Below are positions 17,296-64,000 of a stretch of 64,000 nt of DNA, one piece after another. The notes below the pieces were generated by a model, which was not told where the DNA came from, made no database searches, and was given only the letters and a program-made list of their open reading frames with translations. Position 1 is the stretch's first letter. Each line of letters starts with the position of its first letter. Position numbers and translations under genes: made by a program. This DNA is from Schmidtea polychroa. Taxonomy: Eukaryota. Location: NCBI GenBank assembly GCA_044892525.1, contig CM097887.1, positions 55,552,001 to 55,616,000 on the forward strand, written 5' to 3'.

Positions 17296-17296
17296 A

Positions 17297-19738: not shown

Positions 19739-19748
19739 TTTTTTAAAA

Positions 19749-24691: not shown

Positions 24692-24959
24692 TATTTATAA
24701 ATTAGCAAACTACGCTACTTGCTATATAGTAGTGTATAAACCTTGCACCCGATCCACAACTCCATTTTTAAGAGCTTCCCTTCCATAATTCAACACAAGA
24801 GGGTGGTTGTTTTTGAAAATATAGGGTGAAAAGGATGAAAAGACTTGAAAAAACTGTTAGATTTTTATATAAAAGTGTAATTTTTAAAGGTATGGAAAGG
24901 TATGGATTTGGTGATCTTTAAGGGGTGGGGGTGGTCGGGTGCAAGGTTTATACACTACT
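24692..24959 (-). repeat. Right Polinton TIR (268 bp)
   Basis: Inverted copy of 11187-11454. The pPolB ATG is at 24638, just inside. Confidence 0.95.
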
Positions 24960-27479
24960 TATGTGTCTTTCAAAATTATTATTATTCTTATAGTGTTGGG
25001 CTAGAACTGATTTCTAGACCCAAATTATAATTGTGACTGAAATGTGTAGGTACACAACATGCAAAAAAGCAAAAAGTATAGCTAAATATTAAAAACTACA
25101 CCAAATAAACAATGGTAATTAAAGGAGAAAGCAACAAAAAATAAACACAGAAATTAAATAAAATTATACAAAAGCAAGAAGTTATGCAAAATCTAACTCA
25201 AAAATAACCAAATAAACATAGAGTTACAAAAAACAAACTCGAATAACTTAAAAGATGGTAAAAACAGTAAAAAATTCAGAAAAACCCAGAACATTCCAAA
25301 AAATGGCGATGACCATCATAAAAGCTACCTTAAACAATAAAATTTAGGAAAAAATAAATAAATTAGTAATAAAAATAAAAAATATTAAAAAGAAATTCAT
25401 AAAACATCAATTAAAATAAAAATTAAATTAAAAGTAATATAGAATGTTCTGGAACCGTTCCAAATCCATCATGGACGTAAAATTAATGAAAAATAATTAA
25501 AAATTTAAAATTTAAAAATAAAAATAAATATTATGGCACAAAAATTGCCATTAAAAATATCAAAATCGCAAAATAGAAAATTCTGGAATAAAAAGAATTC
25601 GAGTTTGTTTTAATGCATCAATACATACACGTAAAATACCATTAAAATAGGTATATATACTGACACGTTTCAGTCACAATCAATCACTTTTATGCCAATA
25701 TTTTTGTTGACGAAAATTTTGCCGAAAAATTAATAGTAGGTATTTTTGATTGATATATGTTTTATCTATGATTAATCACGTATGTAATTATTTCAATTTA
25801 AACCATTTTTAATTAGAATATTGTTAAGATCTATTTTTTTTTACTTTTTAAATACGACTGATCAGCGACGTCTTAGTGCGTCTCTATTTAGTCCTACATT
25901 TGATGGTAATGAATTTTTCTAAAATGAAACATGCAGAATTGCACTATCATTAATATATATATATTTTTTTGTTCGGTCATCGGAGGTCGGCCACTTCATG
26001 GTTCTGCCATGGAGTTGTGTCGATAAAACCCTTCCGCTATGGCTCCAACTATTTATTTATCGGTCGACAGTGATGTTTCGAATCAATATTACAGTAGGGC
26101 TTGTCGTAGCGGTCACAGTGGGGCCGCGTAAGCAAGCATTCTTCCCAAGTTCGAAGGCAGTACACAATTAAACTCAACATTAAAAATCTCGTACAATAGT
26201 TTTACACTAAGGTCATAATTGAGTAGATCTCAGGCCCAAATTAAACACAGCAATTAGAATTCAATTAATGTAGTCGGTTAAGACCTCTCCACTTAGGCGT
26301 TTGTCGAACATCGTTAGTAAATAAAAATTTTTGTAAAGACGTAAGGATTTCTCTCGGATCTAATTATGATGATAGCATCTCGAAGTTCGACAAGCGTAAA
26401 GGATGGAATAGATTCAATTAAGTATAAAACCCCCAGCGAGTAGTATATATCTTTATCTCAGGATTAAAATGTAGTATTGCCAATACCCAAATCGATCAGG
26501 AGTTAGGGTCATATTATAGAAATAACTAACTTCTTTTATTTTTCCACTTATAAATCAATATGAATGAAGTGTTATTAGTTTAGAAAATGTAATATCATCA
26601 ATTATGAACTATTATCGATAAAATCTTTTCAATTTATAAAATAAAATGTTTGATGTGAATGTCTATTCAACTATAAAGTTATATTAGCAACTATAACATA
26701 GATATGCGTGATCCTAACTAACTATTCAATTCATCCCTCAATTAGGAATTACAATCGGGAAACTCGTATAAAATTGTAAATGATTTTATTGATAAATGAT
26801 AAATCATACTTGAGTTCATATACCAGGTCTAAACTAAAAGTCTTCCGCAATCAGTTAACTATGAGGGTATACTTGTTAGATTATATATAAAGCATGAATT
26901 AAAGATACACTCTGATCGTCAAACTACTAGATATATATTGGTTAAATTATAAAAAGTGATTATAATTATGTATATAATATAAGTCAAAATATGCTCTAAT
27001 CATTAAACCATAAGATAAGGATTAGTTAAATTAAAAATTATGACTATAAACTATGTATAAAATATAAACCAAAAATATACCAAACTATAAAGTACCTATC
27101 AGTTAAAAATATAACTACAAATTATTTATAAAAAAAGAAAAAATTTAAAAATTATAAAATAGAATTTGTATATAAAGTGTAAATCAAAAGTATTCTCTGA
27201 TTGTGAATTCTAAATTATATCATAAAATATAATCTTATGCTAATTTTGAAACCTGACTTATAAATATGAGAGGCTATGTATAGATTGTATATGTACGATG
27301 ATAATACAATATAAGCCCTAAACCCAAAATACGACATATAAATGGTAACTGTATCTCGATTATTAACTATAAATGATAAATAGTTATCTTAATTATAAAA
27401 AGTATAAATGATAAACGGTTATCTTAATTATAAAAATACAATCTAAAAATAATTATACATAAAATTTTAATTATAGAAA

Positions 27480-29286
27480 TGTTGGGCTAGAACCGAGAAT
27501 CGAGAGCTTGTTTTAATGAATCAAAAATACATAACAAAAAAATCGCACGAAGTTAAATTAAAACACTAATCAATACAAATTAAAGTACATAACACATTGA
27601 TGATAAATAAGACCCGGGTGAAAAAATAAAGGAATGAAAAAAAAGGTCGCAATCACTAACACAATTAGGAGAAACATCACATTCGGAATAGCTAACCACT
27701 AAGAAATAAAATAATAATAAATAAAATAATGGGTAATGAATTAATTAATAATATGGAAAATTTCTAAATAAATAAATTTAAAATTTAAAATAAATTATCT
27801 AGTAAACTGGAGAAATAATAAAAAATGTAGAATGAAAGTAGTAAAATTAGATAAACCATAAAATTTATAAAACTAAAACTAAAAATAAAACCAACAAATT
27901 ATTTAAATTATACAACTTATAAAACCAAATTGTTTAAATTAATGAAACTAAAGTAAAATTAACTGAACTTATTTAAATTACAAAACTTGTAAAACTAAAT
28001 TAAAATTAGCAAAAAACTATTTTGATTATAGAATTTATAAAAATAAATCTTAAAAGTTAATAAAAATTAGAATTTTGAATACCTAAATTAATTAAATTAA
28101 AAAACAATAATTGCACACATGCATGCATGCATGCAAAAATTAATCAGAATTGCCTCGCATTCTAATTGGATATAGTAGCAGAGAATGCGTAGGCGTACAA
28201 TTCAATCAGTATAAATACAGATTGAAATTTCAGTTGTTCAACTTGTTAAATTAGTTTTCAGTTTTACACAACAAATCGTTTGTCAGGTAACGAACATATG
28301 CTCTCAATTTTCGATTTTATGCCCTTGTGGATTGGACTGGTAATTTTATTTTAATGTGAAATTTTAGGTAATGTTTTAAGTTAAATAAATTTTATATTCA
28401 ATTTAGTTTAGTTTTTTTTATTATTGTTTAATTCCATTTAGTTTCAAGTTTGAAATAATAGTTTTTATTGAGTTTATTTATATTATTTGTTGATTGTGAA
28501 CGATAGTAACGTGGAGTTGAGGAACTTCATGTCATGACATGAGGTGCCTTCGGGAGCTCAGCCGGTGGACATGAGGTTCTTCAATCACGCAGCTGGATTG
28601 GGCCGAAATGTGGGGGCTTCCTCACGGGTCCTATCGCTGGAAGTACTTTGGCCAAACATAGGTTAGGACTGAGAATACAGGCAGATCCCTGCTCAAATTT
28701 TTTGAAGTACAATTTAAATATTATGGGAAGCGCGGATTAACTTGGAAATAAGGGCCAATCCCTGCTCAAATTTTTCAAAGGATAATTTAGATATTGTAGG
28801 AAGTGTAGAACAATAATTATTAGCTGGAAAATAAGGGCCAATCCCTGCTCAAATTTTTTTTTGCGAGAAAGTTTAAATATTCATAAATATCAAAAGAAAT
28901 ACCTAGCAACCTTTATTAATAGAAAAATAAGGGCGCATCCCTGCACAAAATTTTGAAAAGAAAACAATAGAAAACAACTAGAAATGAAGACCATAACCGA
29001 ATGAGATAGAAAAGTAAAAATAGAAAATGATCAATGACGTAAGACCTTCTATCGGCCGTCTAGAACCCGAAGAGAAAATACAATGGGGAGTAGTTTTAGC
29101 AATAGAGCTCACCTGCTCATTGTTTTTTCGCCTTTGTGTACAGTACCAACATGGTCGTCGCCATGGGTACACAAATGGTTAAATTGCAATAGTCATGGAG
29201 GTGCTTAGGAAAGAGTCGAGTGAATATATATGATTACCCCTAATGCATTTAAAAATTTAAAATGACACACCCCTAAGTAACCAACA
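27480..29286 (+). mobile_element. Element C: 1.8-kb solo-LTR-like relative nested in the AT array of A
   Basis: GAAA|TGTTGG...CCAACA|GAAA, with perfect 6-bp inverted termini and a 4-bp TSD. Removing it restores the array unit. Confidence 0.85.
28675..28955 (+). repeat. Four dispersed direct repeats (AAATAAGGGCCA)ATCCCTGCTCAAATTTT in element C
   Basis: TCCCTG cores at 28686, 28759, 28842 and 28938. Confidence 0.8.
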
Positions 29287-31466
29287 GAAATATAATTTAT
29301 AAATAGTTATATATAACTCTGAATTTAAAATATAAAGTATAAATACTCATTGGAAATTATTAAAATATAATCTATAAAGAATCATACCTAAAATTTTGTA
29401 AGAATATAATTTATCAATAGTTATGTGCAAATCCGAGTTTAAAAATATAACGTATAAATGGTTATATGTAAATTATCAATGTATCTTAATTATAAAATAC
29501 GATCTACAAATGATTATACATAAAATTTTGGCTATGAAAATATAATTTCTAAATAGTTATGTATAAATTTGGATTTAAGAATATAAATTATAAATAGTTA
29601 CATATAATCATATATATACATGGACCTTAAAAATATAAACTATAAATAGTTAGGAATAAATTTTACTTACAAAAATATAAATTATAAATAATTATGTAAA
29701 AATTTTGATTATAAAATATAAAGTATAAATAGTTATATATAAATTATATACGGATATTGATCATAAAAACATAATCTATAAATAGTTACGAATAAATTTT
29801 ACGTACAAAATATAAATTATAAATGATTATATATAAATTTTGATTACGGAATATAAAATATAAATAGTTGGTTATAAATTATATAGGTATATGGATGGTT
29901 ACGGATTAATTTTACGTACAAAAATATCAACTATAGACGATTATATATAAATTTGGATTATAAAAATATAATTTATGACTAGTAATATATAAATTATAAA
30001 TGTAGTGTGTCTATAAACCCTAATTATAAACAGTCATATATAACCTCTGATCTTAAAAAACACGAATTCTGGATAGTTATTTAGAGTTACTAATGCAACT
30101 AGATTATAAGAGAAAAACCAGGGATAATTATATATATAAATTATGTATGGATCTGGATTATCGAGATTGAAATTCTAAATAGTATTATAAAATTATGTGT
30201 AAGAATGCAAATTACAAGTTTGTATTTTGACTAGAACCTAAATTATAAATACCTAAACTATGAACTGTATTTCTCTCCAAGATATAATTCATGATTACTT
30301 ATATTATATGAACTACCTCTACCGATTAAGGATAAATTATAATCCATAAATGAGTGCTGTTCCTGAAACGCAAAAAAATTTTTTTTCAAGGATATCACTG
30401 TATGCTAGCTGAACCTTACAAAATAAGTATTGGCATTTGCTATGATTAAGATCATCACTAGCACTGTTATTCCTATCTCTATCGCTCCCCATAATTACCG
30501 TTATCCTGAATATCATCATAATTCCCCTTACTGCATTACAAATTAGTTACAATAATTGTTAGCATAAAATCAGATTTGTACCACAAAATTTAGCTTACCT
30601 TGAAAAATGGGAAATTGCATATCCAAGCATTTAGTGTACGAACATAGAAGTAAAATCCCAACTAAAACACGCAGCCATGAGTAGGCTTCTTTGGGAGGAA
30701 ACCAGCAGGGTGAACGCTACCGATGCGAACTCGGCATTGGAATTTCATGAAAGCTGGGCATAAATCCACGATTTCAGGTAAGTTAAGGGGCATTTTTGAT
30801 TACAATATCACCGTAGCATTGAAATTGATATTCGTCCGGAAATGGACCAAACAACCTAAAATTCGTATAAAACGGTCACACTGAATATGACAACCCGGTC
30901 TAAGTGAGGATGAGGTGGGAAACTAAGCTCCAACAGCTCACCCAGCACCAACGGGGCTGGTTGATTCAGTAGTTAAATAATTAGCATAAAATAAAATATT
31001 ATGTCGATGACATAACAAACATTAAAAATAAACCATAGAATTTTCAATAATTAGGTTAGATAAACAAAGTGCAAATTTTTTTTTAAAAATATAAAAGTTG
31101 ATTTGCTGAATTAACACGGTCAAATAGAATTAGATCTTCAGAAATTAATTTTTGTTATTTTTTTTTATTTAACTGTGAATTTGGTAGAGTATTTGCGGTA
31201 CTGATTTAACAGTGGAAAAAGAAAATTTTTAATTTATAAATTACATAACGGATTAATAACCGAGATTTAAATCAATATACGCTCAATTTAGCAAAATCCA
31301 TAATTCCCCCACAATCTATAACGCGGATTATGATAAGACGATCCACAAATGGACCCACTCATCATTTTTGCGACTTAGTCGAATGGATAGACCATAGAAA
31401 CGAAATTCCGAACATACCAAAAATTGATACTAATATCTCCTTTAATTGGGCTTATTTAATAGCAGA

Positions 31467-31829
31467 ATGTCTCAAACAAGTGGACCCGACGAAGTGGAAT
31501 ACAGGCAGATGATCACGCGGCTCCGGACCCGGTACATCTGGTACCGGATCCACGATTGGAATCGGGGGTTGGACCTGGATAATTATGGTCCGGTCATTCG
31601 AAGTGGCCCAGAGCCCGACGCCCCGGCGTGGGTGAAAACAGAGCCCACCAACAATGTGTTACGAGAAGCCCGCGATCGAGCGGCCATCGAGGTAGAAGTG
31701 GCCCAGATGCGGCTGAGGAGACTCGAACTCCAGCTCAGAGCCGAAGCAGAGGGAGTAACCCCCGAGGAGCTGGAGGAGGCAGATACCCCTCCACGAAAAC
31801 GAGGGAGGCCCCGGAAGAACCCGGCCTAA
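31467..31829 (+). CDS. Element ORF1: 120-aa protein with a coiled coil and a C-terminal AT-hook
   Basis: The ATG at 31467 aligns with the ATG at 61584. C-terminus PRKRGRPRK. Paralogous to 61584-61949. Confidence 0.8.
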   Translation: MSQTSGPDEVEYRQMITRLRTRYIWYRIHDWNRGLDLDNYGPVIRSGPEPDAPAWVKTEPTNNVLREARDRAAIEVEVAQMRLRRLELQLRAEAEGVTPEELEEADTPPRKRGRPRKNPA

Positions 31830-32062
31830 CTTATCGGTAGTGATAATTCGGACGAAACTATTTGATTGATATACTTTAGCGATACTGTGTTGCGTTTGAT
31901 ATTTTGTGGTTTTTGTAGCAATTATGACGAATTGTAGAAATTTTTATTATTAAAACTTTTACATTATAGTTTGTCGTGCGTATTCATCGTGTAATAAATC
32001 ATCTTTTAGTCATTACATAGAAGTCTTTTCAGCTTTTTAACTATTTTTCAGGAACCATTAAA

Positions 32063-33699
32063 ATGTCGAAGGATCTCCGAATAGCATGCTGGGATTGTAT
32101 TTGCTCCAATATTCGAGATATAAGCCAAAGTACTTATACATATGCTGACAAGCTTATCTCTGGAAGTTTTGTCATTGAAAACTTGGTCCGAGAACAGCAT
32201 ATAGACTTCCTAGATGCATTCGAAGCAGCCATAAAAATATGGCAATCTAACGTAAATTATAATCAGAATTACCTTTCCTTTATGAATAATGATTCGTTAG
32301 AAAAACATGCTTTTTTTAATAAAAATGTTAATTTTAAAGAAAAATTTAAAGAAAATGTTAATTATAATAAAAACCCTAATAATTTTAAAAAAACCTTAAA
32401 AAAAATTAATATAAGTAATGAAAATTTTATTAAAAAACAAGTTATTAAAAATAAAAACGTGAAAACCCTTGATATTAAAAACGTGAAAAATTTACAATTT
32501 TTTGAAAAGAAGCATGTTAATTATTTCCTTAATGATTGTAGAAAATTTTATAAAAATAAAAAAGCTAGAAATAAAAAACGAAAAAAATTAAAGAAAAAAC
32601 AAATTCAGAATAATTTGTTTAAATTTTCCTCAAAAACCAGATCCGATGACAACGATAAAAATTTTTTTCGTCCTCCTTCGGAGGATAACAGATACCACTA
32701 AAAAACCTCTGTATGCTAAACCAAAACAAACCATCAAATTATGGAACCCCAAATCATCTATCTATATAAATTTACCAAGACCACACTACGCTTGTCCTAT
32801 TCCAATTAAACCACTTAATAATCAAGAAATCTTTAATCGTAGGAAATGTAAAATTAAACATAATATGCGTTTTGAATACCTCATAACAAATGCGGAACCA
32901 ATTTGGTCAGAAGCCATCATCAGCAATACCAATGAACCAGATGCTAAAATATCCAATCATAATGACTTAGATGAAAATAACATCAACCCTATAGAAGATA
33001 GCCGGATAAAAAATGACTCTTATTTAACAGCTTATCTAACAGCTAAAAAAATAATAACTCCAGCATAATTAATACTGATAATACCAAACTAATACCGGAA
33101 ACTTCTGACGATAGCACTATAGAAAATGACTCTTATTTAACAGCTTATCTAACAGCTAAAAAGAATACATCCAAAGTAACCACTGTAAACCAAGTTAATA
33201 CTGATAATAACAAATTAATTCCCCAAACCTCAGAACTAGATAACTTTTTTCTAAATTAATAAACACTATTCTAAGGAATGGTGGCAATGATAGCATAATT
33301 GAAAATGAAAATAATAGTGACAAAAACATCTACCTATTAGAAGATAGCTCTATTGAAAGGGACTCTTATCTAAAAATAGGGCAATCTAACAATGGATATG
33401 CCTTACCTATAATAAATAACTACAGAGGAAGCTTTAGTTTTTCGGATATAGGTAGAATGAAACTGCGCGTTTTAAACAGAGATAGCACAAGTGAAAATAA
33501 AAATGATAGTGACGATTGTATAACCAAACCAGAAAATGATAAAGATGACGAATATGAAACTCATTTAGAATCCGATGCCAATAAAGTTAAAATGATACCA
33601 AAATTAAAAGAAACTCCAAAAAATAATATATCGCCAAATGCTCATAAAAAAAACCCTATCAAAGCTAATAACAAAAAGAAGAAGGGAAAACGTCATTAA
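32063..33699 (+). pseudogene. Cargo ORF unique to element A: Lys/Asn-rich, frameshifted, internally repeated
   Basis: ORFs 32063-32701, 32646-33068 and 33457-33699 lie in tandem. NDSYLTAYLTAKK is repeated at ~33015 and ~33125. Absent from element B. Confidence 0.45.
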
Positions 33700-34337
33700 G
33701 AGTGTATATTATCAATAGGTCAATGTAGGAGTCCTTGTATGGGCTCCGCCTAACTGATAATACCTTTTTAGTAGTTAATATTTGTAATATAAAATCTTTC
33801 CTTTAAAACCACCTTACCTTAAAACACCATTCCTTCCAATCCATACTATAATATATTGTATAATATCTGACGGCTACAAAAATCGCAAATGGAGTCTTCT
33901 TACTCCGAAGTATTAAATTCATTTAGATATGTATGGACACGGAATGCTTGCTGATAGAATACTTTATGGAGAACCGCGTTTGATGCCAGAATTCGAGGAC
34001 TGATACTGTGAAAGAAAGAACTAAGCCAACGCTTGCTGATTGGTGATAAAATACTTAGAAAAAACCACGTTTGATGCCAGAGTTCCTAACTCCAGCATCC
34101 AAAGAGAATACACATAAAAATTTCAGTTTATTTAAGGGTGAGAACCGTTCTCCCCTTCGGCCTTGTGCCAGTTCGATTTACATAAAATAAAATTTGATTT
34201 TTTTTTTATTGCGTATGGGGTGTCTCCAGGGACGAGATGACCCTCCCTATCCTTCATCTATTAATTCATGCAATTAATCGAATCACTTTTACGCATATGG
34301 AAGCTAGTTATGGAACTTCATTATTATCTTCATTTAG

Positions 34338-34777
34338 TGTACAAATTCCTCGAAAATCTACGAAAAGACCGCGAACAGGCCCAGCAACAAGCCGAAGACC
34401 TTCGAAGTCGAGTCGAGAAGCTCAAAACCAAGTGCCGAGAACTCGAAGGTACTTGGTTCAGTCCAGCTGAGATGAAGAAACGGACAACACACATCTCACA
34501 ACTCCAGACCCAAGCGGAGCAGGATCAACTCGAAATCCGAGCGTTGAAGCTACAAGTACGCTCGCTCGAGAGCAAACTGAACGAAAAGTTCATCCAGAAC
34601 GCTCTCCGAGAGCAGATTCGTCCACTTCCGGTGGAGCTGGCCAAGATATACCCACCTGCCCAGGCAAGCAAGCCGAAACGTAAGCGGCTAGGGCGGAATA
34701 CCCGGGAAAAATTGAAAAGGGCCTGGCTGGCCGAGCAAGAAAAAGCGAAAGAGCCTGAAGCCACTCCACAATCCTGA
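34338..34777 (+). CDS. Element ORF2: coiled-coil protein with a basic C-terminal patch, probably entered through a splice acceptor
   Basis: ENLRKDREQAQQQAEDLRSRVEKLK...WFSP...EIRALKLQVRSLE...KPKRKRLGRN. Similarity to B begins exactly after AG at 34336-37. Confidence 0.75.
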
Positions 34778-36516
34778 GGAATATTTGAGAATGCGACCCC
34801 TCCTGAGTAAAACAGACCTTGTAATATAGTAGTGGATAAACAAATGATTCTTGTTGTCTAATGAATATGTGATCAAACTTTGTGATTGTCCAGAACCAGA
34901 CAGTCGGCAGAAAGGCGTTTGGGAAAACAATCTCGATAAGGGACCGAAATAAATCGGACACGTGCCTTCTATCGGCGTCCGTGAACCCATAGAGTGCTCG
35001 ACAATTATAGTGCTCGACAATTATAGTGCTCTTAACGCGCTCACTTTTTGCGAGTACTCAACCCCTTGGTACAGTACCAACGTTGATTGCTCAACGGGTA
35101 CCAAGAGGAAAACAAGGTTGTATTCTGGGTTACGCTGGTAACAGCACTTAAACATTCAACCACCTGTAACCCACCAATAGCATATGTTTTGAAATCAAGA
35201 TTATAATTTCAAATACTAATTATAATTTTAAATACTAATTAAGATTATTTATTTTGTAATTCTAAATAATAATTAGTCCCCGTAATATATTTTATTTTAA
35301 TGTACATGAACATCGAAACATGAAATAATATTCCAAAAAATTAATAAGATGCACAGTAATAATAATTGTCAAAAGCATAAACTAATGTACGTAGAACATA
35401 AGTCAATAATCGAATTCCAATGATAATCGTCACTGTTTTGACTTGTCCGGCTTTGGTTATCTGGGTTCCATGTAGATATTGACTCTGAACTTGTTGATAC
35501 CCGTTCTATAGTAGTGGGTCAGTTCGAATTCTTCAATTCTCCTTCCTCTGTCATCCAACATTACTTTAATAAAAAGAGCATATTTGTGCGACAAAAGTCA
35601 TAGAAAATTGTTTGAAAATTTATTTTATTAAAAGTTTTATGTACAAATATGAGCTTTGGGGTCTCAAAAAATACCCCGCAACCTCTACTAACCGTGAATA
35701 TATTAGTTTTAAACGAATTTTCCCATAATTATAATTAAAAAATAATAGTCGTATTATGTTAGGACTAATGTGGTAATCTTCATTTTGTGTTTAATCTTGC
35801 ACAAAAATGTCAAACATTCGAAAGGTCCTAAGACGGCTTCTGTTTTTCATTGATATTTCTTAGTGGAGAACCTAGTCTTATATTGTAACCAATATTTTAA
35901 TTTATTTTAATAATATATTTTAAATAATCGTGAAATGAATAATATTCAATAATTAAAGACTTTCTTAAATGCAAATTATTTTGTCAATCTTTGCTATGTT
36001 AGCGTTTGGAATTTGATATGTTTTATTGTGCATTTTAATTACTTTTCGATACCTCATTTTGCGATATTTAATATGTTTTCACAGATTTTTACTGAACTTT
36101 GTGTTCTAGCATACATATATTATAACAACTTTTTTCAATTTATACCACCGATTTCTTTTTATTTGACTGTATTTATTAAAAACTTGACTATGAATTATTA
36201 AATATATCGATTTTTTTATATTCTCGAATTTCGGCACTACCTTTTTCAAATGATATGTATAATTAGCACCTTTGATTCTGTTCCTACATAATTTTAACTT
36301 TTACTCAAATGAATGCTTTGAAAAATATTCTACAATTTTGCAATAATTGTGTTTAAACATTTAACATTTTTTCTACTGTACAATATAAAAACATGTAAAA
36401 ATATATAGCATAAGTCAGAGACGAATATTTTAAACAATCAATTTTTTATAAGTATAATATATCAATTAAACTTTAACTATTAATTCTTTTGTTTAAATAA
36501 TATTCAGTTTTCAGCT

Positions 36517-37488: not shown

Positions 37489-38657
37489 GTTTGGGCTCTA
37501 TTATTGACATCGCTAATGAATCTATAGAAATACAGCACGCATACATACCATTAAGCTAAATTAAAAACAGTTAAAACACCGACTAAACAAAATTAACAGA
37601 TTCTACATCACACAAAAGTAACACCCTAATAAAAAAGAAAAATCAAACAAAAGCGAAATGAAATCTACTCTAATATAACATGAATACATATAAACAGTAA
37701 ACAAATTTGAATTAACAGCGATAAAAATAAATAAGAACGGGAATTAGAAAGATTTCTATAACAACAGCAGAAAAAAATAAAAAACCGGAACAATTAGCAA
37801 AAATAGCGACTAACAAAAAAATTAACATCTTAAAAGTAAAATTAATAAAATGTAAGAAGAATTAACAGAAATCACTAAATAACAAGAATTATATATTGAA
37901 AAATATAAATTTCATCATGGAATGAACTAGAAGCGTCCATTTCTAGCATGGCTGCAGATCTATAAAAAATAAATCAAAAATAAAATTTAGAAAATGAAAT
38001 TAAAAATAATTTACAAAAAATCGCCATTAAAATTGATAAAAATTAACACTCAAAATTAAATTTTGTTTTTATGAATCTACACACACACCAAAATTAGAGT
38101 ATTTGCATTTAAGAAAGTCTGTAATAATTGAATGTATCTGGAGATGACGAGAAGATCCTTTTAGAACAAAATGCATTTCGGCCAGAAATCACTTATGCTT
38201 AATTGTTGAAATTTTGAGACAATATTTTCTGACAATTTTTGTTTTTGAAATTAAGGGGAATTAATTCAATTTTATGATAATTTTTGTTATTATTTATTTC
38301 TTTTATTTTTATTCATAGGTGACAAGGTCGTAAGATTAGTCTGAGTTTACCGTTTTATTTAGAGAAACGAGATCCCCTCAGTCCTGGATTTTTCTTTTCC
38401 GGCATACAGGCAACCATACACACTAGACAGCAAAGTTTCGTAGTGTTACCGACATGTATAGCAGGTGCTGCGGGGTTCCCAACATAGACAATGACTCCGA
38501 TGGGCATCTTCGATGTTAGACTAAACTCTATTAAATCGACCGTGGCTACAATGGGCTTTTGGGTCGGCTGCAACTGTGGCATGCACACAATAATAAGGTT
38601 TGCCGTACCGAGTATAGTAGGCCGATGCATCGAACAATTTGATTGATTAATTATACA
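37489..38657 (+). repeat. Fragment D: diverged 5' part of a TGTTGG-family element
   Basis: Same block order as A and B: an A-rich tract, GGAATG...CATGG, AAAATCGCCATTAAAATTG, TTTGTTTTTATGAATC. Confidence 0.55.
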
Positions 38658-40720
38658 TGTTTGGCTAGAACTGATTTCTAAACTCATATCTTAGAATAGT
38701 GACGGAATATGCCGGTACACAACATACATACCTAGCTTTAAGTTTAATTAAATTTAAATATATAAAACACCGAATAAACAATAATAATAAGGAGAACAAC
38801 ACACAAAACTTAAAACATCCAACTAATAAATTAAAACACAGCAAGAAGTATTGCACAAAAATTTATTCAAATATCCGAGAAACATAAAACAATAAAAACA
38901 AATTCGAATAAAGGCAAATAATAAAAAGAAAAAAGAAAAATTTCATAAAAACCTTATGTAAAGAAAATTATATAAAAGTTTTTGAATAATAATTAGAACA
39001 ATCCAAAAAATGGCGAAATACATCATGGCCGTCAAACGACCTAATAAAATTTATAAAAAATAAATATTTTAGTTTAAAATAGAAAAATTTTCGAAAAGAA
39101 TTCACAAAAAAAACATTCCATGTTAAATTTTCAGGGGTTTTCATTATTATATTCCCATGTTTTCATTCTTATATTCCCATGAAATTGATATTATTTAAAT
39201 TCATGACAAAATATATTTAATCAGGTGAATATACAAATAATAGGTTATTCTTTCTTAAATATATAAATCGTTGAAACCAGAATTATTCAATCAAAATCTT
39301 AAAAACTTAATTAATTTTATAAATGGAGAGGAAAACAAGAAAAACTGTAACTCGAGAATTATTTGATTTGGTTTGCACTTTATATGCAACATATCGACAT
39401 AGTATAGCTGAGATCAGCAGAATAGTAAGTCTAGAGAGAAAGACTGTCGGGAAAATAATAAGACAGCACGAAAATAATGAACCTTTTGTTCCTGCTGCAT
39501 AGTGAAGGTCTAACACAATCTTTAGCAAAAACAACAATTTCGCAGAAGTAGAACAGACCATTTTCAACTCTTTTGCTATCGAAAATTCGCATATTCAAAA
39601 CGAGGTCAAAAATATCATTCAAGAAAGACATAATGTGACTATAGGCTTGCCTAAAATCAGTTGAAGAATCAGAAAAATAGGATTGAGTAGAAAGAGGTTG
39701 ATGCTCTAGCAATTTATGCATCTCAAATATCCAGAATAAACAATGAAAATATAATTTTTTTGGATGAAACTAGATTTAATCAACATTCACATAGATATTA
39801 TGGTTATTCTGCTGAAAATGTTAAAGCATATGTGCAAGTGCGGGCCAATAAAGGCACTAATATAAGTTTAATGTGTGCTGTTGGGTATGAAGGTGTGATA
39901 GCATATGAATATAAAACTGGTGCATATAACTCAGAAAGTTTTATAAACTATATTAATGAGAAGCTATCGCCATATTTTAGAAGGTATCCTCATAAAATTT
40001 TGGTTATGGACAATGCGAGAATTCACAAATCTTCGACCGTATTGCGAACTTTTTCGGATTTGCAAATACTAATAAAATATCTTGTGCCTTATTCACCAGA
40101 ACTTAACCCAATAGAAGAATTTTTTTCTATGATTAAATCACGTTTTCATGGTTTACAATTAAATAACACAGAAAAAACAATCGAAGTGTGTTTAGATGAT
40201 CTATTAACAGCAGGAACGGATTATTCTAATCAATGCGAGGGTTTTTATCTGAATATGCGTAGGTGGCTAGATAAAGCTTTAAGAAGAGAAATGTTTATAT
40301 AAATAAATATTTATACGCTTTATTTTTGTTTATAAATTGTTTTGATAGTTTCTTATTTATATAAATATTTAAATATATGTTAACATTTATTTATTTTTAT
40401 GGGAATATAATAATGAAAACATGGGAATATAAGAATGAAAACATGTGTAATCTATCTCTAATGCCTATATCCAAATTTAATAAAAAATAATTCAAAAATA
40501 AAATTTTGAAAAATAAAACAAAAATTATTACTTTAAAATCGCCATCAAAATTGATAAAAATTAAGAATCGAATGTTCTAGAATTAAAATAATTCGAGTTT
40601 GTTTTACTGCATCATTGTACACACACTTACTTGCACACCAACAATAGGGTATATATGCCGACACATTTTATTCACAAGTTACTCTTTTATGCCAAAGTTC
40701 TTTTCTAATTTGATCAACTG
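38658..40720 (+). repeat. Fragment E: 5' part of a TGTTGG-family element, interrupted by a Tc1-like transposon
   Basis: Starts TGTTTGGCTAGAACTGATTTCTA. Contains AAAAAATGGCG...CATCAT. Resumes after 40449 with AAAATCGCCATC and AATTCGAGTTTGTTTT. Confidence 0.7.
39138..40449 (+). mobile_element. Tc1/IS630-like DD34E transposon, decayed (transposase remnant 39323-40302)
   Basis: An N-terminal HTH remnant precedes FLDET...VMDNARIHK...PYSPELNPIEE, with 34 residues between D and E. Inverted ends are built from 22-bp TTTTCATT(A/C)TTATATTCCCATG units. The right end is followed by TA. Confidence 0.85.
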
Positions 40721-43793: not shown

Positions 43794-43840
<47 letters not shown>

Positions 43841-56867: not shown

Positions 56868-56933
56868 TCGTAGGTTACAGGTAATCCACATTTTATCCTT
56901 TCATGCTGTTTCCAGCGTAACCTAGAATACAAC
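56868..56933 (-). repeat. Fragment G: isolated 3'-terminal stem-loop of the A/B family
   Basis: The minus strand reads GTTGTATTCTAGGTTACGCTGGAAACAGC...ACCTGTAACCTACGA and abuts ATAG (56864-67). Confidence 0.75.
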
Positions 56934-59214
56934 TGATTCATTCTACCATTCTAAACTTGGGAAAATTGAGAATATTCTGGTAAATTGTAATCGTAAAGTT
57001 TCATTGGCATTTCGTAAACTCTGACAGCTGTCGAGATATATGTATTTTATACAATCCAGCATCTCGGATTTCCCATGACATTTCCGCTCTCTTTCTTGAA
57101 AAAGCCATCGAGATAACAAGCCAATCCAAATTTTGTTTTGCTTCTATGCACTTGTAATTAATAATGGCCTTCTTTCATTTAATCGCCTGTTTTTATTGAT
57201 TTTCTTCTATACTCTTCTCATTTTTCAATAATTCATAGTTTCTCCACAATATTAATAATATTGTCTAGAAAAGATACTCTTTTTACAATACTCTTTAGGA
57301 ATTTAAAGAACATAAGAAAGGTATTTCCAAAATATAACTGCCTTTTTTGGTACACCTTTAATTGATTTAATCAACTAACTCTAAAACCATTCTTTACTCG
57401 TTGAAATATTTTAAAATAAATCTATCCTAAATTTTATATTCAAACAAATTGGTTTCTAAGTCTTTTATGGTTTCAAAACAAAATAATTAAATTATGCAAA
57501 CAACAAAATAATTAAGCATACTTTATAACCAAAGATTCTGTTTAGCTAATTTGATTTTAATTAAGTACAAAAATTAATTAAAAATTGACATTTGATTGTA
57601 AGTAGTGTTTCCAAATTACCGGAATTACAATTACCTGGGTATTCGAGTAGTAATTTTTCAAACTATCCGGGTAATTTTAAAAATTCATATAAATTTGTAA
57701 AAACTATATTAAAAAATCTGGAAATAATAAATTACAAAACAAATATGAAAATAAATTACTATAGTGTTGGGCTAGAACTGATTTCTAGACCCAAACTTCT
57801 AATTATGACCGAAATATGTAGGTACACAACATGCAAAAGGCAAAAAGTATAGCTAAATATTAAAAACTACACCAAATAAACAATAATGATTAAAAGAGAA
57901 ACAACAAAAAATATAAACACGGAAATTAAATAAAATTATACAAAAGCAAGAAGTTATGCAAAATCTAACTCAAAAATAACCAAATAAACATAGAATTACA
58001 AAAAACAAACTCGAATAACTTAAAAAACGGTAAAAATAGAAAAAAATTCCAGAAAAACCCAGAACATTCCATAAAAATGGCGATGACCATCACAAAAGTC
58101 ATCTAGAACAACAAAAGTTAGAGAAAATAAATAAATTAGTATTAAAAATAAAAAATCTTAAAAAGAAATTCATAAAGCATCAGTTAAAATAAAAATAAAA
58201 TTAACATGGAATGTTCTGGAACCGTTCCAAATCCATCATGGACGTCAAATTAATGAAAAATAATTAAAAAATAAAAATTTAAAAATAAAAACAAATATTA
58301 TGGCACAAAAATTGCCATTAAAAATATCAAAATCGCGAAATAGAAAATTCTGGAATAAAAAGAATTCGAGTTTGTTTTAATGCATCAATACATACACGTA
58401 AAATACCATTAAAATAGGTATATATACTGACACGTTTCGGTCACAATTAAATCACTTTATTTTTGTCGACGAATTTTTTCGAGAAACCAATAGTAGGTAT
58501 TTTTTTTTGATTGATGTAATTCTATGTTACATATGTTAATCATTTATGTAATTATTTTAATGTAAGCTATTTCTTATTTAAAATGTCCTCAAGATCTAAT
58601 TTTTGTCTATTTAAGTACGACTGATCAGCGGCGTCTTAGTGCGTCTCTATTCAGTCCTGCATTTGATTATAATAATTTATCTTATGAAACACGCATACAT
58701 GCATTATTATTATTTATAGAACTTTTGTTGTTCGGGTCAGCCGGAGGTCGAACTACTTCATGGTCCTGCCATGAAGTTGGGTCGAGGAAATCCTCCGCCT
58801 GACTCTCCTTATTTATTAAAGGTCAGCCGTAAATGGTTGACTTAGCATACAACATTAAGGTTTGTCGAAGTGGTCACAGTGGGGCCATGGAAGCAATATT
58901 CTTCCCGACTCAATGCACACATAGTCAAACTCAACATTTAAAATCAGCCCAACAAAAATACCCTAAGGTTGATAAATTGAGTAGATCTCATACCTAACTT
59001 AATGACAATTTTGCAAGTTACATTCAATTTAGACGGTTAAAGTATCAATCTCAAAGCATAATATCAATTTCCAAGTATAATCTTAATCATACTATATAAC
59101 TTAAGTGGGGTATAATCGAAAAGTTGACCGCTCATACAGTTTGAAAAGGCAAAGGATGGAAATGCCCTACTCCCAAGACAGTTTTTACCCGTATGTTATT
59201 CTTAAAGATGTGAT

Positions 59215-60720
59215 GCGTAAAATGCACTGCCTCCAACCTATCAACTATAATCATTTACTAAGTGGAAAATTGTAATTTATACCACCCTATCAACTATAAT
59301 CATTTAATAAGTGGAGAATTATAATTTATATAACCAAAATTACAATATGTGATCACTTTCAAATTCCGAAATGTAATTCATCAACATATAGCTATAGAGT
59401 ATTTCTAAGTCCTCGAGTTGAAAATATAATTTATCAATCCATGATGGTAAACGATAATTATTTATCAGACGTAAAAGTATAATTTATAAATATTTAGTTT
59501 ATCGTTTTAAGTCCGAAAATATAATTTACGAACCTCTAATTATAACGTATAAATGGCTTTCCGATGTTAAAAACATAATTTATAATCTCGTAATTATATC
59601 ATATGATCAATTTTAAATTCAGAAATAATTTATAACCATGTAAATATAAAGTCTAGCCGAGCGTTGATATAACTTATAAAATCCATAATTATAAATTCTA
59701 GTTATTTACCTAACGTAGAAATATAAATTCTAAAACCCAATGATTACCAAATAAATCCTTTTGAAGTTCGAAAATATAGTCATAGACATCTAATTAAGAA
59801 ACGTAATTGGTTTTCAAAGTTAAAAATATCATTTATAAATTTATAACTATAAGCATAACCATGTATTACGGGTAAAATATAATTCATTTATAAGGTATCA
59901 GTAAACTATGAGTTAAAATAAATTGTATAAGTCTACAACTATAATTATTTTCAAGTATAAAAGATATAATTTATTCAAAAAACATAATCAAAGTTCACTG
60001 CTGGAATTATAATTTACATATGACCATAACCATAACCAGATATCAAGAAAAAATGCAACTTATATTATCCGCTATAAAGTACCAATACATTTCGAGTTGA
60101 AAGCATAATTTAGAAGTGTAAAAAAGATAACTTATTATCAAGTATAATCTAAAGTTACCGTTAGGATTATAACTTATACATAAATATAATCCATAATTCA
60201 TAACCATATATTAAGTATACAATGTAACTTATAATTATTCACTATAAAATACAAATAACTTTCGAGCTGAAAACCTAATTTAGAAGTGTAAAAAATATAA
60301 CTTATTCATAAAGGATAGTCTAAGTTTACCGTTAGAATCATAACCTATACATGAATATAAGCTATAACTACATCGCGAGTAGAAATTGTAATTTATAATT
60401 GCTCACTATAAAATAAATTCCAAGCTAAAACCGTTTATAAGTGCAAGGAATATATTCTAGTCATATAGCACAATTAAGTTGACAGGTTAAGATTATAATT
60501 CATAAAATTATAACTATAAAATATAACGATGTATTAAGTATAAATACAATTGGTAATTTTCCCACTATAACGTACGAGCAAAAATTCGAGTTAAACATAG
60601 CTTAGATATGACTATAAATTGCAATTATTTTCAAGTTCGGAGACATAATTAATTAATTTTAAGTTGGAATATAATTTATAGCAGTATACCCACCATACTA
60701 TAGTAGAACTACTCAATGTG
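59215..60720. repeat. Degenerate ~43-54-bp AT-rich tandem array in element B
   Basis: Recurrent (G)AAAATATAATTTAT. A 49-bp duplication at ~59233-59330 and a ~171-bp duplication at ~60088/60259. Confidence 0.7.
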
Positions 60721-61583
60721 ATTTATAAGTGGAACTACCACGAACCCCCTAATATGCTAGTTTAACTTTGAGACACGTGCCCTATAATCGTTATTAATCG
60801 TAAATGCCATCATTATGACCACTGTTGTTGCTTTTGACCTAGAAGGGTGAATTTTAAACTAAAACTCGAATTACAATATATCTTAAATTCACTTACCATA
60901 AGGAGATCTCTCTGTTCAATCATTTTTCGTATTAACCAGCATCGAAATCTTCAGAAATGTCGAGGAGCCAGTAACAGATAGGGTGATTATTCTTCTGGGA
61001 TAGGGTTGATGGAGTAGTTTTCTAAAAAACGAGGAGAAGCAAAGTATAAAAAGCAGATCAGGCTATTATGAACAGCTTCGCTGACGAAGAGACATTGGAT
61101 TGCGACTCAACGATGAGTCCCTCCGTCGACGAAGTCTTCCTTTGAAGCCAATAGGGTTAATAAATAATTAGAAAATCTGAATTAGACATTTAAAATTTTT
61201 GAATAATTTTCTGTATTGTAAATAATTGATTAATGGTTTTGAACCATTAAAACAATCGAATTTAATTCTTAATCCAAACCAATGGAAAACCAAATTGACA
61301 GGCCGAACACTATAGGGAATATAGATAAACCCCAAACGAAAATACAATTTTGGATAATTTCCTTTTGGTTGGGTTGTTGGCTTGTTTGGAGGTTAGGCTC
61401 CTGAATCACCACCGAGTTAGGTATCAACAGATTGTGCCTGTGATGAAATAAAGGTGATGTTAAAGCCCCTTAGGTGAGTTCCCTGGTTACGGATTGCTAA
61501 TGGAAATTTAATCTTAAGTCTATAGTCTAGACATTTTTCACCGCATAATAATCAACAGACTTATATTTTGGGTAATCATAGAT

Positions 61584-61949
61584 ATGTCACAATCAAGCAG
61601 TCATAGTGAAGAGGAGGACCACAGGCAAATGATCACACGGCTCCGTACACGGTACGTCTGGCACCACATCCACCGGTGGAACCAGGGACGAGACCTGGAT
61701 TGCACAAATCGAGTGATCAGGAAGGGCCCCGAAGTAGATGCCCCGGCGTGGGTGAAGGAGGAGCCGGAAAACGATCTTTTGCAAGAGGCCCGTGACCGAG
61801 CGGCCGTCGAGGTGGACGCAGCCCAGGTGCGACTGAGAAAGCTCGACCTGCAAATCCGGGCAAACCGAGAAGGAAAGGCTTTGGAGGACCTGGAGGAGGC
61901 CGAGGCGACCCCGCGAAAAAGGGGGAGGCCTCGCAAGTACCTGGCCTAA
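61584..61949 (+). CDS. Element ORF1 (copy B): 121-aa coiled-coil + AT-hook protein
   Basis: RQMITRLRTRY.W..I..WN.G.DLD...APAWVK.EP...EARDRAA.EV...PRKRGRPRK is shared with 31467-31829. Confidence 0.8.
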   Translation: MSQSSSHSEEEDHRQMITRLRTRYVWHHIHRWNQGRDLDCTNRVIRKGPEVDAPAWVKEEPENDLLQEARDRAAVEVDAAQVRLRKLDLQIRANREGKALEDLEEAEATPRKRGRPRKYLA

Positions 61950-62214
61950 CTCATTCCCAATTCTAACTCACGATGGACATGTAGCCTGATTTATGTGATG
62001 ATGATCCTCACTTGAATAAATTCCCTCTTTACTAGATTAATAAATTTGATTTGATGATGAACTTTACTTCGAACAAATTGCCTCTTTAATAAATTATCGC
62101 AAAACGATTTGATTCATCATAATGATAAAATGTCTTTATAATCAGTACTGACCTTATTATATAATCGACCGAATCTCATGGTGTAATGACATAATCTAAG
62201 CATATTCCTTTCAG

Positions 62215-62645
62215 TGTTCAAACTGTTTGAGAACCTACGGAAAGACCGAGAAGAAGCACAAAAACAGGCCGAGGATCTCCGAGCCCGAGTGGACAAACTC
62301 AAGGGACGGTGCCGGGAACTAGAAAACACCTGGTTTAGTCCCGAGGATATGAAGAAGAAGGTGGCGCAGGTCCTCCAACTGCAAACCTAAGCGGCACAGG
62401 ATCAGATGGAGATCCGGGCCTTGAAGCTCCAACTCCGTGCGTTAGAAACCGAACGCAATGAACAAGTGGTTCATGGAGCCGCAATAAGTCAAATCCGGCC
62501 GTTGACCGTGGAGTTGGCAGCAATGTATCCTCCGGCCGCGAAAGACAAACCCAAAAGGAAGCGGCTGGGACGGAACATCCAGGAAAAATTGAAGAAAGCT
62601 AGACTGGCCGAGTATGAACGCCAAGAATGGTCGACGTCCACGTAA
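62215..62645 (+). pseudogene. Element ORF2 (copy B): coiled-coil protein with one nonsense codon (CAA>TAA at 62388)
   Basis: ENLRKDREEAQKQAEDLRARVDKLK...WFSP...LQT*AAQDQMEIRALKLQLRALE...KPKRKRLGRN aligns without gaps to copy A. Confidence 0.8.
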
Positions 62646-64000
62646 TCTCCGCAATATGAACAGTTATTTAGGCTATACGCCTTGAATTTTCTTTTGTTAT
62701 TGTTATGGGTAAATACATTTGCGTTAGAGTATTGTATGAGGTATGTTGTTCGCAAATATTGAGTGATTGAGAATGAGTGTGTTGAGATTTTGGGAAAACA
62801 ATCTCGATAAGGGACCGAAAGAAATCGGACACATACCTTCTATCGGTAGTCCGTGAACCCATAGAGTACTCGACAATTATAGTGCCTCGATGCGCTCACT
62901 TTTTGCGAGTACTCAACCCTTGGTTCAGTACCAACGTTGATTACTCAACAGGTGCCAAGTGGAAAGAAAATGTTGTATTCTGGGTTACGCTGGTAACAGC
63001 ACTGAATAACAAACACCTGACCACCTGTAACCCACCAATAGTTATTCTTTATTAAAGAAATATTTAAAAAAACTAGTGCATTTAATGTTGCAGGACTCAT
63101 TCTGTTTCTAAGTTTATTGCAAAATATCCCAGCAATAGAAAATATACGTTCCGATGCAGTAGATGTTGGTTTCACCGTCAGTAAGGCTTGATATAATTTC
63201 ATATAATCTCTCTGTTCAAGATCCATTATTTGCTTCTAATAGCTTTAACTCTTTCTCAACTGTTAGTGTAACACTATTTTCAGGAGTTTGATTTGTGAAC
63301 TTAGCAATACATTTTTGAAATACTAAATATTCACTACCTGTATCTAAATATTCGTCGGATTGTAATTTTAGTCTATCTAATTCATTAGTATTGCTTAGAA
63401 ACAAACGTACGATTAACGAAGCTGCCAATTGCTTGATTACAGCTTTCGAGGCGCAGCAAAAGAATTCGTTAAATATTGGGTACACTCCATTGTGCAATAG
63501 CATTAACAATGACGTCAAATCCTTATTTCTGCGTTGGTCAACACGTATTTTTAACGAATTTTTCAACTCCTCTGCTGAAGGTGTTACTTTTACTTATCAC
63601 TTATTTAATGGCTTAAAGTTTGTATACACAAAAAATTTAAATGACAAAAGGAAAATTAAATTTTAAATAGTTTTTACATATACATTATAGCAACCACCCA
63701 CAAAGCCTACTTATATAAAATTAATAGAAATAAACTTATTTTATTATAAATTCATATTCAAACCAATTGGGATGGCTAATAGCACCGTCTGCAAGAGTAT
63801 TGTATTGTAAGTGATAGAAATTATGAACAATTTCAAATGAGAAATATGATGTGAAAATTATTTGAACATCAATAATTTGTTATCCGGATATCCGATTCAA
63901 TTACCTGGGTAATAAAATACTCGAAAAAACACTCAAATTATCGGGTACCCGAATTGGAAATACTAATTGCAAGGATTGCAAATAATGAGATATATATAAT

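What the first reader, a model, noticed from the sequence alone, without database searches (positions are those of the whole stretch)
57765..63037. Unclassified TG...CA mobile family with 4-bp TSD, its own two-gene cassette, a DNA array and structured ends (best candidate for an undescribed system)
Seen: two independent insertions (A 24994-35176, B 57765-63037) share the same architecture. From 5' to 3': a terminal hairpin, an A-rich tract bracketed by an inverted repeat, conserved GC islands, an AT array, an AT-hook ORF, a coiled-coil ORF, and a structured 3' end. Neither has RT, integrase, transposase, a recombinase, long TIRs or paired LTRs. At least seven more relatives or fragments occur in the window (C-I). 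Established: TG...CA ends with a 4-bp TSD are the signature of Ty3/Gypsy integrases, and multi-kb LTRs exist (plant Ogre, planarian Burro). Inference: these are either giant solo LTRs that encode proteins inside the LTR, or a non-autonomous family mobilised in trans that keeps its own accessory genes.
Basis: partly seen in the sequence, partly recalled or inferred. Interest (0 to 1): 0.85.

Follow-up and report, generated by a model that had tools for sequence, protein, structure and literature searches.

The report
LTR-like mobile element carrying two genes
Two copies of a 5-10 kb mobile element with retrovirus-style ends each carry the same pair of small, selectively maintained orphan genes but no enzyme for moving; they are most likely oversized stand-alone LTRs of a large retroelement, an unusual variant rather than a proven new class.

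Summary
A (24994-35176) and B (57765-63037) are independent insertions of one family. Both have 5' TGTTGGG...CCCACCA 3' ends and a perfect 4-bp duplication (ATAG in both). They share the same module order: a structured 5' module, an AT-rich tandem array, ORF1 (helical, AT-hook tail), ORF2 (coiled coil, basic patch) and a structured 3' end.

Both ORFs are under purifying selection (pN/pS about 0.3, only in the annotated frames). Neither has a credible relative in 1.84 billion protein representatives, Pfam or the PDB. RNA-type covariation and an A-rich sense strand point to an RNA stage. Neither copy holds RT, integrase, transposase, long TIRs or paired LTRs.

Only three further relatives (C, D, E) are supported, not seven.

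The ends fit the LTR integrase-recognition consensus. My best reading (about 0.5) is stand-alone LTRs of a large, complex Ty3/gypsy-type retroelement whose U3 carries accessory genes. The window shows no paired copies, PBS/PPT or gag-pol. An LTR-less, trans-mobilised family remains possible (about 0.25). The source genome could not be searched, so the decisive census is still open.

The parts
57765..63037 (+). Element B, complete copy (5273 bp)
   Evidence: Homology to A in the same module order. TG...CA ends and a 4-bp duplication.
57761..57764 (.). B left target-site duplication (ATAG)
   Evidence: Repeated at 63038-63041.
63038..63041 (.). B right target-site duplication (ATAG)
57765..59040 (+). 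B 5' module: terminus, A-rich tract, GC island
   Evidence: 83.6% identical to A 24994-26281. The first ~690 bp are about 94% identical and the rest 65-78%.
57767..57794 (+). B 5'-terminal hairpin
   Evidence: Fold z-score -2.5 in B and -2.8 in A. Not kept in C.
57800..58449 (+). A-rich tract enclosed by nested inverted repeats (outer arms 57800-57824 / 58425-58449; inner pairs at 58002-58016 / 58364-58378 and 58059-58072 / 58206-58219)
   Evidence: Compensatory C-G to T-A change between B and A in the outer pair, and the inner pairs are kept in C.
58743..58796 (+). GC-island hairpin
   Evidence: 20 predicted pairs. All 3 substitutions between A and B give G-U pairs and none is broken.
59233..60680 (+). 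B AT-rich degenerate tandem array (units about 49, 85 and 170 nt)
   Evidence: Shares only short k-mers with A's array.
61584..61949 (+). B ORF1, 121 aa: two long helices plus an AT-hook-like C-terminal tail; intact
   Evidence: pN/pS 0.33 in this frame only.
62214..62645 (+). B ORF2, coiled-coil protein with a KPKRKR basic patch; broken by one in-frame stop
   Evidence: pN/pS 0.30. A conserved YAG lies directly upstream.
62789..63037 (+). B conserved 3' module (candidate R-U5)
   Evidence: 83.5% identical to A 34918-35176.
62981..63034 (+). 3'-terminal stem enclosing a GNRA-loop hairpin, followed by ...CCA
   Evidence: 12 pairs, none broken, one G-C to A-U compensatory change in E. The enclosed loop diverges.
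24994..35176 (+). Element A, complete copy (10183 bp), flanked by ATAG at 24990-24993 and 35177-35180
31467..31829 (+). A ORF1, intact
34268..34777 (+). A ORF2, intact (169 aa; homology to B starts at 34337)
29288..30350 (+). A AT-rich tandem array (units about 42 and 135 nt)
38658..40702 (+). Relative C: 5' part in two pieces (38658-39136 and 40446-40702), separated by a nested Tc1/DDE_3 relic. Left flank is TACA.
37532..38054 (+). Relative D: A-rich tract only, degraded 5' end, abuts C
56868..56946 (-). Relative E: 3' terminus of a divergent copy. Its flank CTAT is the reverse complement of ATAG.

Best explanation
A and B are stand-alone (solo-type) copies of the long terminal repeat of a large, complex LTR retroelement of the Ty3/gypsy or BEL kind.

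Shown:
- They were inserted by a retroviral-type integrase. The ends fit the LTR recognition consensus, the duplication is 4 bp, and there is a likely target preference for ATAG/CTAT.
- They carry two small genes that have been kept by purifying selection while synonymous sites saturated.
- The sense strand is A-rich throughout.
- Three stems evolve in the way of sense-strand RNA helices.

Inferred:
- The LTR is oversized because its U3 part holds a structured 5' module, an AT-rich tandem array and two accessory genes.
- These genes would be read from subgenomic RNAs of the full-length element that end in the 3' LTR. A conserved YAG sits exactly where ORF2 homology begins, and B has no ATG there.
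- The conserved last ~250 bp would be R-U5, with a terminal stem next to the primer-binding site of the full element.
- ORF1 (helical, AT-hook tail) would bind AT-rich DNA, possibly the element's own array.
- ORF2 (coiled coil, basic patch) would oligomerise in the nucleus.
- Together they would act as regulators of the element's transcription, RNA handling or chromatin state. This would be comparable in role, not in ancestry, to orphan accessory proteins such as CERV of Cer1.
- The internal gag-pol part was lost from A and B by LTR-LTR recombination.
For: - Ends: 5' TGTTGGG matches TGTTRNR 7/7. 3' CCCACCA matches YNYAACA 6/7 (consensus from PMC3601003). The terminal inverted repeat is short and imperfect, 11 of 16, as in LTRs.
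- Duplication: perfect 4-bp flanks at both copies, chance 0.0077 each. E's flank is the reverse complement.
- Independence: the flanks of A and B differ beyond the duplication.
- Selection: pN/pS is 0.33 and 0.30 with p of 3e-12 or lower in the annotated frames. Values are about 1 or higher in shifted frames.
- RNA-type structure: G-U-preserving changes in the GC-island hairpin. Compensatory changes in the 5' outer stem and the 3' stem.
- Strand asymmetry: all 28 one-kb windows of A and B have positive AT skew, mean 0.125. Outside the elements the mean is 0.011 with sd 0.106. E has the opposite sign.
- Mosaic identity along the element fits recombination or gene conversion, both common in LTR elements.
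- The last 250 bp are better conserved than the ORFs. R-U5 is usually better conserved than U3 (PMC3601003).
- LTRs up to 6.5 kb are known (PMC6431247).
- A conserved acceptor-like YAG precedes ORF2.
Against: - The window has five family members, yet no two direct copies flank gag-pol. No PBS follows any 3' end and no polypurine tract precedes any 5' end. No RT, protease or CCHC motif occurs anywhere.
- A, at 10.2 kb, exceeds any LTR length I could document.
- No AATAAA, TATA box or Inr is shared by A and B in the last 450 nt. AATAAA is reported as well conserved in animal Metaviridae LTRs (PMC3601003).
- Protein-coding genes wholly inside an LTR are rare.
- C and D share only the first ~700 bp with A and B. 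That module may have a life of its own.
Confidence: 0.5

Rival explanations
1. An LTR-less, non-autonomous element in its own right. The whole 5-10 kb unit is the mobile entity. It is copied or excised and then inserted by a retroviral-type integrase supplied in trans by another element. It keeps two accessory proteins and an AT array that serve its own propagation or maintenance.
For: - All five members in 64 kb are stand-alone or fragments, and no internal retroelement sequence is nearby.
- Each complete copy has its own duplication.
- The ORFs are selected, which is easier to understand if they are the element's only genes.
- No conserved AATAAA, TATA or Inr sits where an LTR would have them.
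- The size is beyond documented LTRs (PMC6431247).
Against: - No known replication route recreates TG...CA ends from an RNA without terminal repeats.
- The ends are asymmetric and only about 11 of 16 inverted, which suits LTR att sites better than transposon TIRs.
- Solo LTRs are very common, and they give exactly this picture in a small window.
- A 64-kb sample is too small to exclude full-length copies elsewhere.
Confidence: 0.25
2. A non-autonomous cut-and-paste DNA transposon of an integrase-related superfamily (Ginger2-like) that has lost its transposase gene.
For: Ginger2 elements make 4-bp duplications, start TGTNR, prefer AT-rich targets (RTATAY), and occur in aphids, hydra and nematodes (PMC2836005). 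A and B start TGTTG and sit in T-ATAG-Y sites.
Against: - Ginger TIRs are 40-270 bp. A and B have at most a 16-20 nt imperfect inverted repeat, and blastn finds no longer TIR.
- The consistent sense-strand A-richness and G-U-tolerant stems point to an RNA stage.
- No rve transposase relic occurs in any copy.
Confidence: 0.1
3. A satellite or dependant of the neighbouring Polinton/Maverick, mobilised by its rve integrase.
For: A lies 33 bp from the right end of a young Polinton (TIRs 98.9% identical) that encodes an rve integrase.
Against: - The Polinton termini share nothing with the family's ends.
- B, C, D and E are not next to a Polinton.
- No sequence is shared between the Polinton and A or B beyond AT-rich noise.
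Confidence: 0.04
4. Not mobile: a segmental duplication of a host locus with two small host genes.
For: Two copies lie on the same strand 22.6 kb apart, and the first ~690 bp are 94% identical.
Against: - The boundaries are sharp and identical, with TG...CA ends and 4-bp duplications in unrelated flanks.
- Further fragments occur in other contexts and orientations.
- Synonymous sites are saturated while the ends are conserved.
- B interrupts a hAT-derived relic.
Confidence: 0.03

Closest known systems
Solo LTRs of Ty3/gypsy (Metaviridae) retrotransposons, especially long-LTR lineages such as plant Ogre
   Same: TGTTRNR...YNYAACA-type ends, a short imperfect terminal inverted repeat, a 4-bp duplication, internal tandem repeats, a better-conserved 3' part, and a multi-kb size (Ogre LTRs 1.9-6.5 kb, PMC6431247; LTR hallmarks, PMC3601003).
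   Different: Two conserved protein-coding genes lie inside the repeat. A is 10.2 kb. No conserved AATAAA, TATA or Inr occurs in the last 450 nt. No paired copy or gag-pol has been seen so far.
Retroviral genes placed in U3 of the LTR (the sag gene of mouse mammary tumour virus; recalled from general knowledge, not tested here)
   Same: A precedent for an accessory gene lying in the LTR and read from a spliced RNA that ends in the 3' LTR.
   Different: One gene in a 1.3-kb LTR of a vertebrate retrovirus. No sequence or fold relation was found to anything in the PDB or Pfam.
CERV of the C. elegans Ty3/gypsy element Cer1 (PMC10309623)
   Same: A lineage-restricted, fast-diverging nuclear accessory protein of an LTR retroelement. 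It is made from a spliced mRNA and has a leucine-zipper-like motif and a basic nuclear localisation signal.
   Different: CERV is 517 aa, is encoded in the internal region and shares exons with gag. No homology to ORF1 or ORF2 was detected. The likeness is functional analogy only.
Ginger2/Tdd DNA transposons (PMC2836005)
   Same: TGTNR start, 4-bp duplication, AT-rich target preference, integrase-type chemistry.
   Different: Ginger has 50-180 bp TIRs and its own transposase. A and B have neither, and they show RNA-type features.
LARD / TRIM non-autonomous LTR retrotransposons
   Same: No RT or integrase of their own. Mobilised in trans.
   Different: LARD and TRIM have two LTRs around a non-coding core. 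A and B have no terminal direct repeats, and they do code for proteins.

Membership tests
LTR of a Ty3/gypsy-type retroelement | Integrase-recognition ends 5' TGTTRNR ... YNYAACA 3' | tested here: met
   7/7 and 6/7 in A and B; 6/7 in C (5' end); 5/7 in E (3' end) (consensus from PMC3601003).
LTR of a Ty3/gypsy-type retroelement | 4-6 bp target-site duplication | tested here: met
   Perfect 4-bp ATAG at both A and B. Chance 0.0077 each.
LTR of a Ty3/gypsy-type retroelement | Occurs as two direct copies flanking gag-pol, with a PBS after the 5' copy and a polypurine tract before the 3' copy | tested here: inconclusive
   Not seen in the 64-kb window. The source genome could not be searched. No copy was found in metagenome or viral collections.
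LTR of a Ty3/gypsy-type retroelement | Conserved AATAAA (and TATA/Inr) defining U3-R-U5 | tested here: not met
   No AATAAA, ATTAAA, TATAWA or TCAKTY is shared by A and B in the last 450 nt. Signals may lie further upstream or be non-canonical.
Ginger DNA transposons | Terminal inverted repeats of 40-270 bp | tested here: not met
   Only 11/16 (12-13/20) terminal matches. No longer inverted repeat between the ends. Feature taken from PMC2836005.
Ginger DNA transposons | 4-bp duplication, TGTNR terminus | tested here: met
LARD / TRIM | Pair of LTRs at the two ends of the element | tested here: not met
   No direct repeat between the 5' and 3' ends of A or B.
Maverick/Polinton | Long TIRs, protein-primed PolB, DJR capsid, rve integrase | tested here: not met
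   These are present in the neighbour at 11186-24960 but absent from A and B.
Helitron | 5' TC ... CTRR 3' ends, no duplication, insertion between A and T | tested here: not met
   Ends are TG...CA with a 4-bp duplication.
AT-hook proteins (Pfam PF02178) | GRP core flanked by basic residues, scoring above the Pfam cut-off | tested here: inconclusive
   An invariant RKRGRPRK is present in both copies. Pfam scores of 11.6-12.1 bits are below the 17.4 cut-off.
Known structured RNA families (Rfam 15), tRNA | Match to a covariance model or to ARAGORN | tested here: not met
   No Rfam match at gathering score in the window, nor at E of 1 or lower in B. No tRNA was found.

The most novel reading that the evidence does not exclude
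A previously unrecognised kind of integrase-dependent mobile element. It has no terminal repeats and no enzyme of its own. It passes through a structured sense RNA, carries an AT-rich array, and encodes two orphan nuclear proteins (an AT-hook protein and a coiled-coil protein). These proteins could bind that array and help the element persist or be chosen as a substrate by a helper's integrase.
Probability: 0.2. Interest if true: 0.8.

Novelty: new variant of a known kind. Interest (0 to 1): 0.5.

Why it matters
If these are LTRs, they show that an invertebrate retroelement can place a selected two-gene accessory cassette and a satellite-like array inside its terminal repeat, pushing LTR size to 10 kb. 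Solo copies would then scatter promoter-less but intact small genes and AT arrays through the genome. Such copies can be mis-annotated as host genes or can seed satellites.

If they are not LTRs, they would be a mobile element class that uses retroviral-type integration without terminal repeats or enzymes of its own. In either case, the two orphan proteins are candidates for new regulators of the interplay between retroelement and host.

Tried and rejected
Searches that found nothing useful:
- Word-indexed protein search with A's ORF2: nothing.
- Profile of the ORF1 pair against 1.84 billion representatives: one hit at E=3e-4. It is a phage structural-module protein that matches only through a coiled coil plus an RRRGRPRK motif, so I rejected it as homology.
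- Pfam: only sub-threshold AT_hook and coiled-coil noise.
- PDB sequence search and Foldseek: nothing.
- Viral and metagenome collections, by DNA pattern and by protein: nothing.
- Exact look-ups of window proteins in public contigs: not on record.
- Rfam and tRNA scans: nothing.
- tblastx of A against B: no further coding blocks.
- Alignment upstream of ORF1: not conserved.

Organism identification failed.

Hypotheses considered and rejected:
- A and B as the two LTRs of one giant element. Their ORFs have saturated synonymous sites, each has its own duplication, and host-like genes lie between them.
- ORF1 and ORF2 as one gene joined by the obvious donor and acceptor. The phases do not fit, and the ORF1 stop is conserved.
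- A tRNA-like 3' end.

Slips:
1. In early calls (16, 21) and in my reasoning I handled B's broken ORF2 as two pieces. Those outputs therefore show where the break lies. It is not repeated here.
2. In my reasoning I briefly read the neighbouring hAT-like frame across B's empty site. This amounts to mentally excising a nested insertion.

Full report
**What is there.**
The window is AT-rich (about 27-30% GC) and animal-like. It holds TRPM and LARP1 exons and a lin-52-like gene with very short introns (seen by eye).

Self-comparison shows that A (24994-35176) and B (57765-63037) are homologous, collinear and on the same strand.
- 5' 1.3 kb: 83.6% identical.
- ORF1: 70% nt, 66% aa.
- ORF2: 67% nt, 64% aa.
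- Last 250 bp: 83.5% identical.

The size difference lies in the AT-rich array and spacer (5.2 kb in A against 2.5 kb in B) and in the stretch between the ORFs (2.5 kb against 0.26 kb). tblastx finds no other conserved coding block. Neither copy holds RT, protease, a zinc knuckle, integrase, transposase, long TIRs or terminal direct repeats.

**Ends and insertion.**
Both copies start TGTTGGG and end CCCACCA. Both are flanked on each side by ATAG, and the sequence beyond that is unrelated. From the window's base composition, the chance of a 4-bp flank repeat is 0.0077 per copy.

The ends fit the published LTR integrase-recognition consensus TGTTRNR...YNYAACA at 7/7 and 6/7 positions (PMC3601003). 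The terminal inverted repeat is short and imperfect, 11 of 16.

Two independent insertions share the same 4-mer. The divergent copy E is flanked by its reverse complement, and C by TACA. This suggests a target preference rather than chance.

**The genes.**
ORF1 is 121 aa in B. It is predicted as two long helices followed by a disordered tail ending in an invariant RKRGRPRK motif. ORF2 is 169 aa in A. It is a long helical hairpin with a KPKRKR patch.

Between A and B, synonymous sites are saturated or nearly so (pS 0.63 and 0.79) and non-synonymous change is low (pN 0.21 and 0.23). This pattern appears only in the annotated frames. The exception is the expected echo in the codon-mirrored antisense frame, which carries stops. 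So both are real genes that were maintained while the two lineages diverged.

A's two ORFs are intact. B's ORF1 is intact, and its ORF2 is broken by one in-frame stop.

The ORFs are 53-60% GC (GC3 0.56-0.69) in a 27% GC genome.

They have no credible relatives in any search.
- Word-indexed protein search: nothing.
- 1.84 billion protein representatives: one marginal hit, a phage protein matching through a coiled coil plus an AT-hook-like motif, which I reject.
- Pfam: nothing above threshold.
- PDB sequences: nothing.
- Foldseek: nothing.
- Viral and metagenome contigs: nothing.

A YAG lies exactly where ORF2 homology begins in both copies, and B has no ATG there. ORF2 may therefore be an exon joined to a donor that I could not find inside the element.

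**Structure and strand.**
Three helices behave like sense-strand RNA.
- GC-island hairpin: 20 pairs. All three A/B substitutions give G-U pairs and none is broken.
- Outer inverted repeat around the A-rich tract: a C-G to T-A compensatory change between B and A. Two inner repeats are kept in the 65%-identical copy C.
- 3'-terminal stem: it encloses a GNRA-loop hairpin and has 12 pairs, none broken. E shows one G-C to A-U change, while the enclosed loop varies in sequence and length.

Single-sequence z-scores are modest (-0.5 to -2.8), and with two or three sequences this evidence is suggestive only. There is no Rfam or tRNA match.

The sense strand is A-rich in all 28 one-kb windows of A and B (mean AT skew 0.125). 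Outside the elements the mean is 0.011 with sd 0.106. The reversed copy E has the opposite sign.

**Other family members.**
Sequence similarity supports three, not seven.
- C has the same 5' terminus and A-rich tract. It is split by a Tc1-like relic, and I compared its two pieces separately.
- D has the A-rich tract only and abuts C.
- E is a 3' terminus on the minus strand.

The pure AT satellites at 43756-46870 are unrelated low-complexity DNA. The arrays of A and B are analogous, not alignable.

**An unexplained mosaic.**
The first ~690 bp of A and B are about 94% identical. The next 600 bp are 65-78% identical. The ORFs are saturated at synonymous sites. C and D share only that first module.

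Three explanations are open, and I could not choose between them:
- gene conversion between neighbours 22.6 kb apart;
- recombination between lineages;
- selective constraint on that module.

**Interpretation.**
Integration by a retroviral-type integrase is well supported. An RNA stage is suggested.

The simplest account is stand-alone LTRs of a large, complex retroelement whose U3 carries accessory genes. In that account the conserved 3' part is R-U5. R-U5 is usually better conserved than U3 (PMC3601003), and LTRs up to 6.5 kb are documented (PMC6431247).

Four points count against it.
- No paired copies, PBS/PPT or gag-pol occur in a window that holds five family members.
- No AATAAA, TATA or Inr is shared in the last 450 nt.
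- A is 10.2 kb.
- Genes inside LTRs are rare.

The main rival is an LTR-less family mobilised in trans. A Ginger2-like DNA transposon fits the duplication, terminus and AT-rich target, but it fails on TIR length.

The function of the two proteins is inferred only from their motifs and predicted folds. I propose AT-rich DNA binding and nuclear oligomerisation, and a regulatory role comparable to that of CERV in Cer1 (PMC10309623).

**Limits.**
The organism was not identified, and its genome, Repbase and Dfam could not be searched. Novelty therefore rests on negative protein searches.

1. Early calls (16, 21) and my reasoning treated B's broken ORF2 as two pieces, and so disclose where the break lies. 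It is not repeated here.
2. I briefly read a neighbouring hAT-like frame across B's empty site in my reasoning.

Noticed in passing
window 11186-24960: A young Maverick/Polinton with 269-bp terminal inverted repeats 98.9% identical. It has a DJR capsid ORF (11460-12776), an rve integrase ORF (12763-13758), a protein-primed PolB region (20978-24638, minus strand, read as two overlapping ORFs) and a weak A32-like ATPase match. It ends 33 bp from element A. The capsid has a 93% relative in an ENA metagenome contig.
   Followed up: partly
window 12763-13758: The Polinton integrase ORF carries an N-terminal parvovirus-type phospholipase A2-like domain (PF08398, 29.5 bits, above the 23.9 cut-off). 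This is an unusual pairing that might relate to particle entry.
   Followed up: no
window 14230-15100: A 436-bp tandem duplication at 99.8% identity inside the Polinton, overlapping the weak ATPase-like ORF.
   Followed up: no
window 54071-55291: A single-exon lipase-like ORF (Pfam Lip_C, 1e-17). Beyond two close relatives (92% and 69% identical), its nearest match is only 30% identical and sits in a compact, bacterial-looking gene context. This may be a horizontally acquired gene.
   Followed up: partly
window 39137-40445: A Tc1/mariner-type relic (DDE_3, 3e-25) with doubled 22-nt terminal repeats, nested inside family member C.
   Followed up: partly
window 62945-63226 (minus strand): An ORF with a hAT C-terminal dimerisation domain (7e-7) abuts B's right end, so B sits inside a hAT-derived relic. 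Other hAT/ZMYM-like relics lie at 7400-8857 and 51368-52030.
   Followed up: partly
window 43531-43755 and 43756-46870: An assembly gap (225 N, left untouched) bordered by very pure AT satellites (GC 3-5%, units of 12, 77 and 193 nt).
   Followed up: no
window 1-5400 (minus), 36519-36990 (plus), 42600-43350 (minus): Host-like genes. TRPM (SLOG domain, 1.6e-19) and LARP1 (HEAT region, 1.2e-13) are supported. A lin-52-like gene with introns of about 40-70 nt was seen by eye only.
   Followed up: partly
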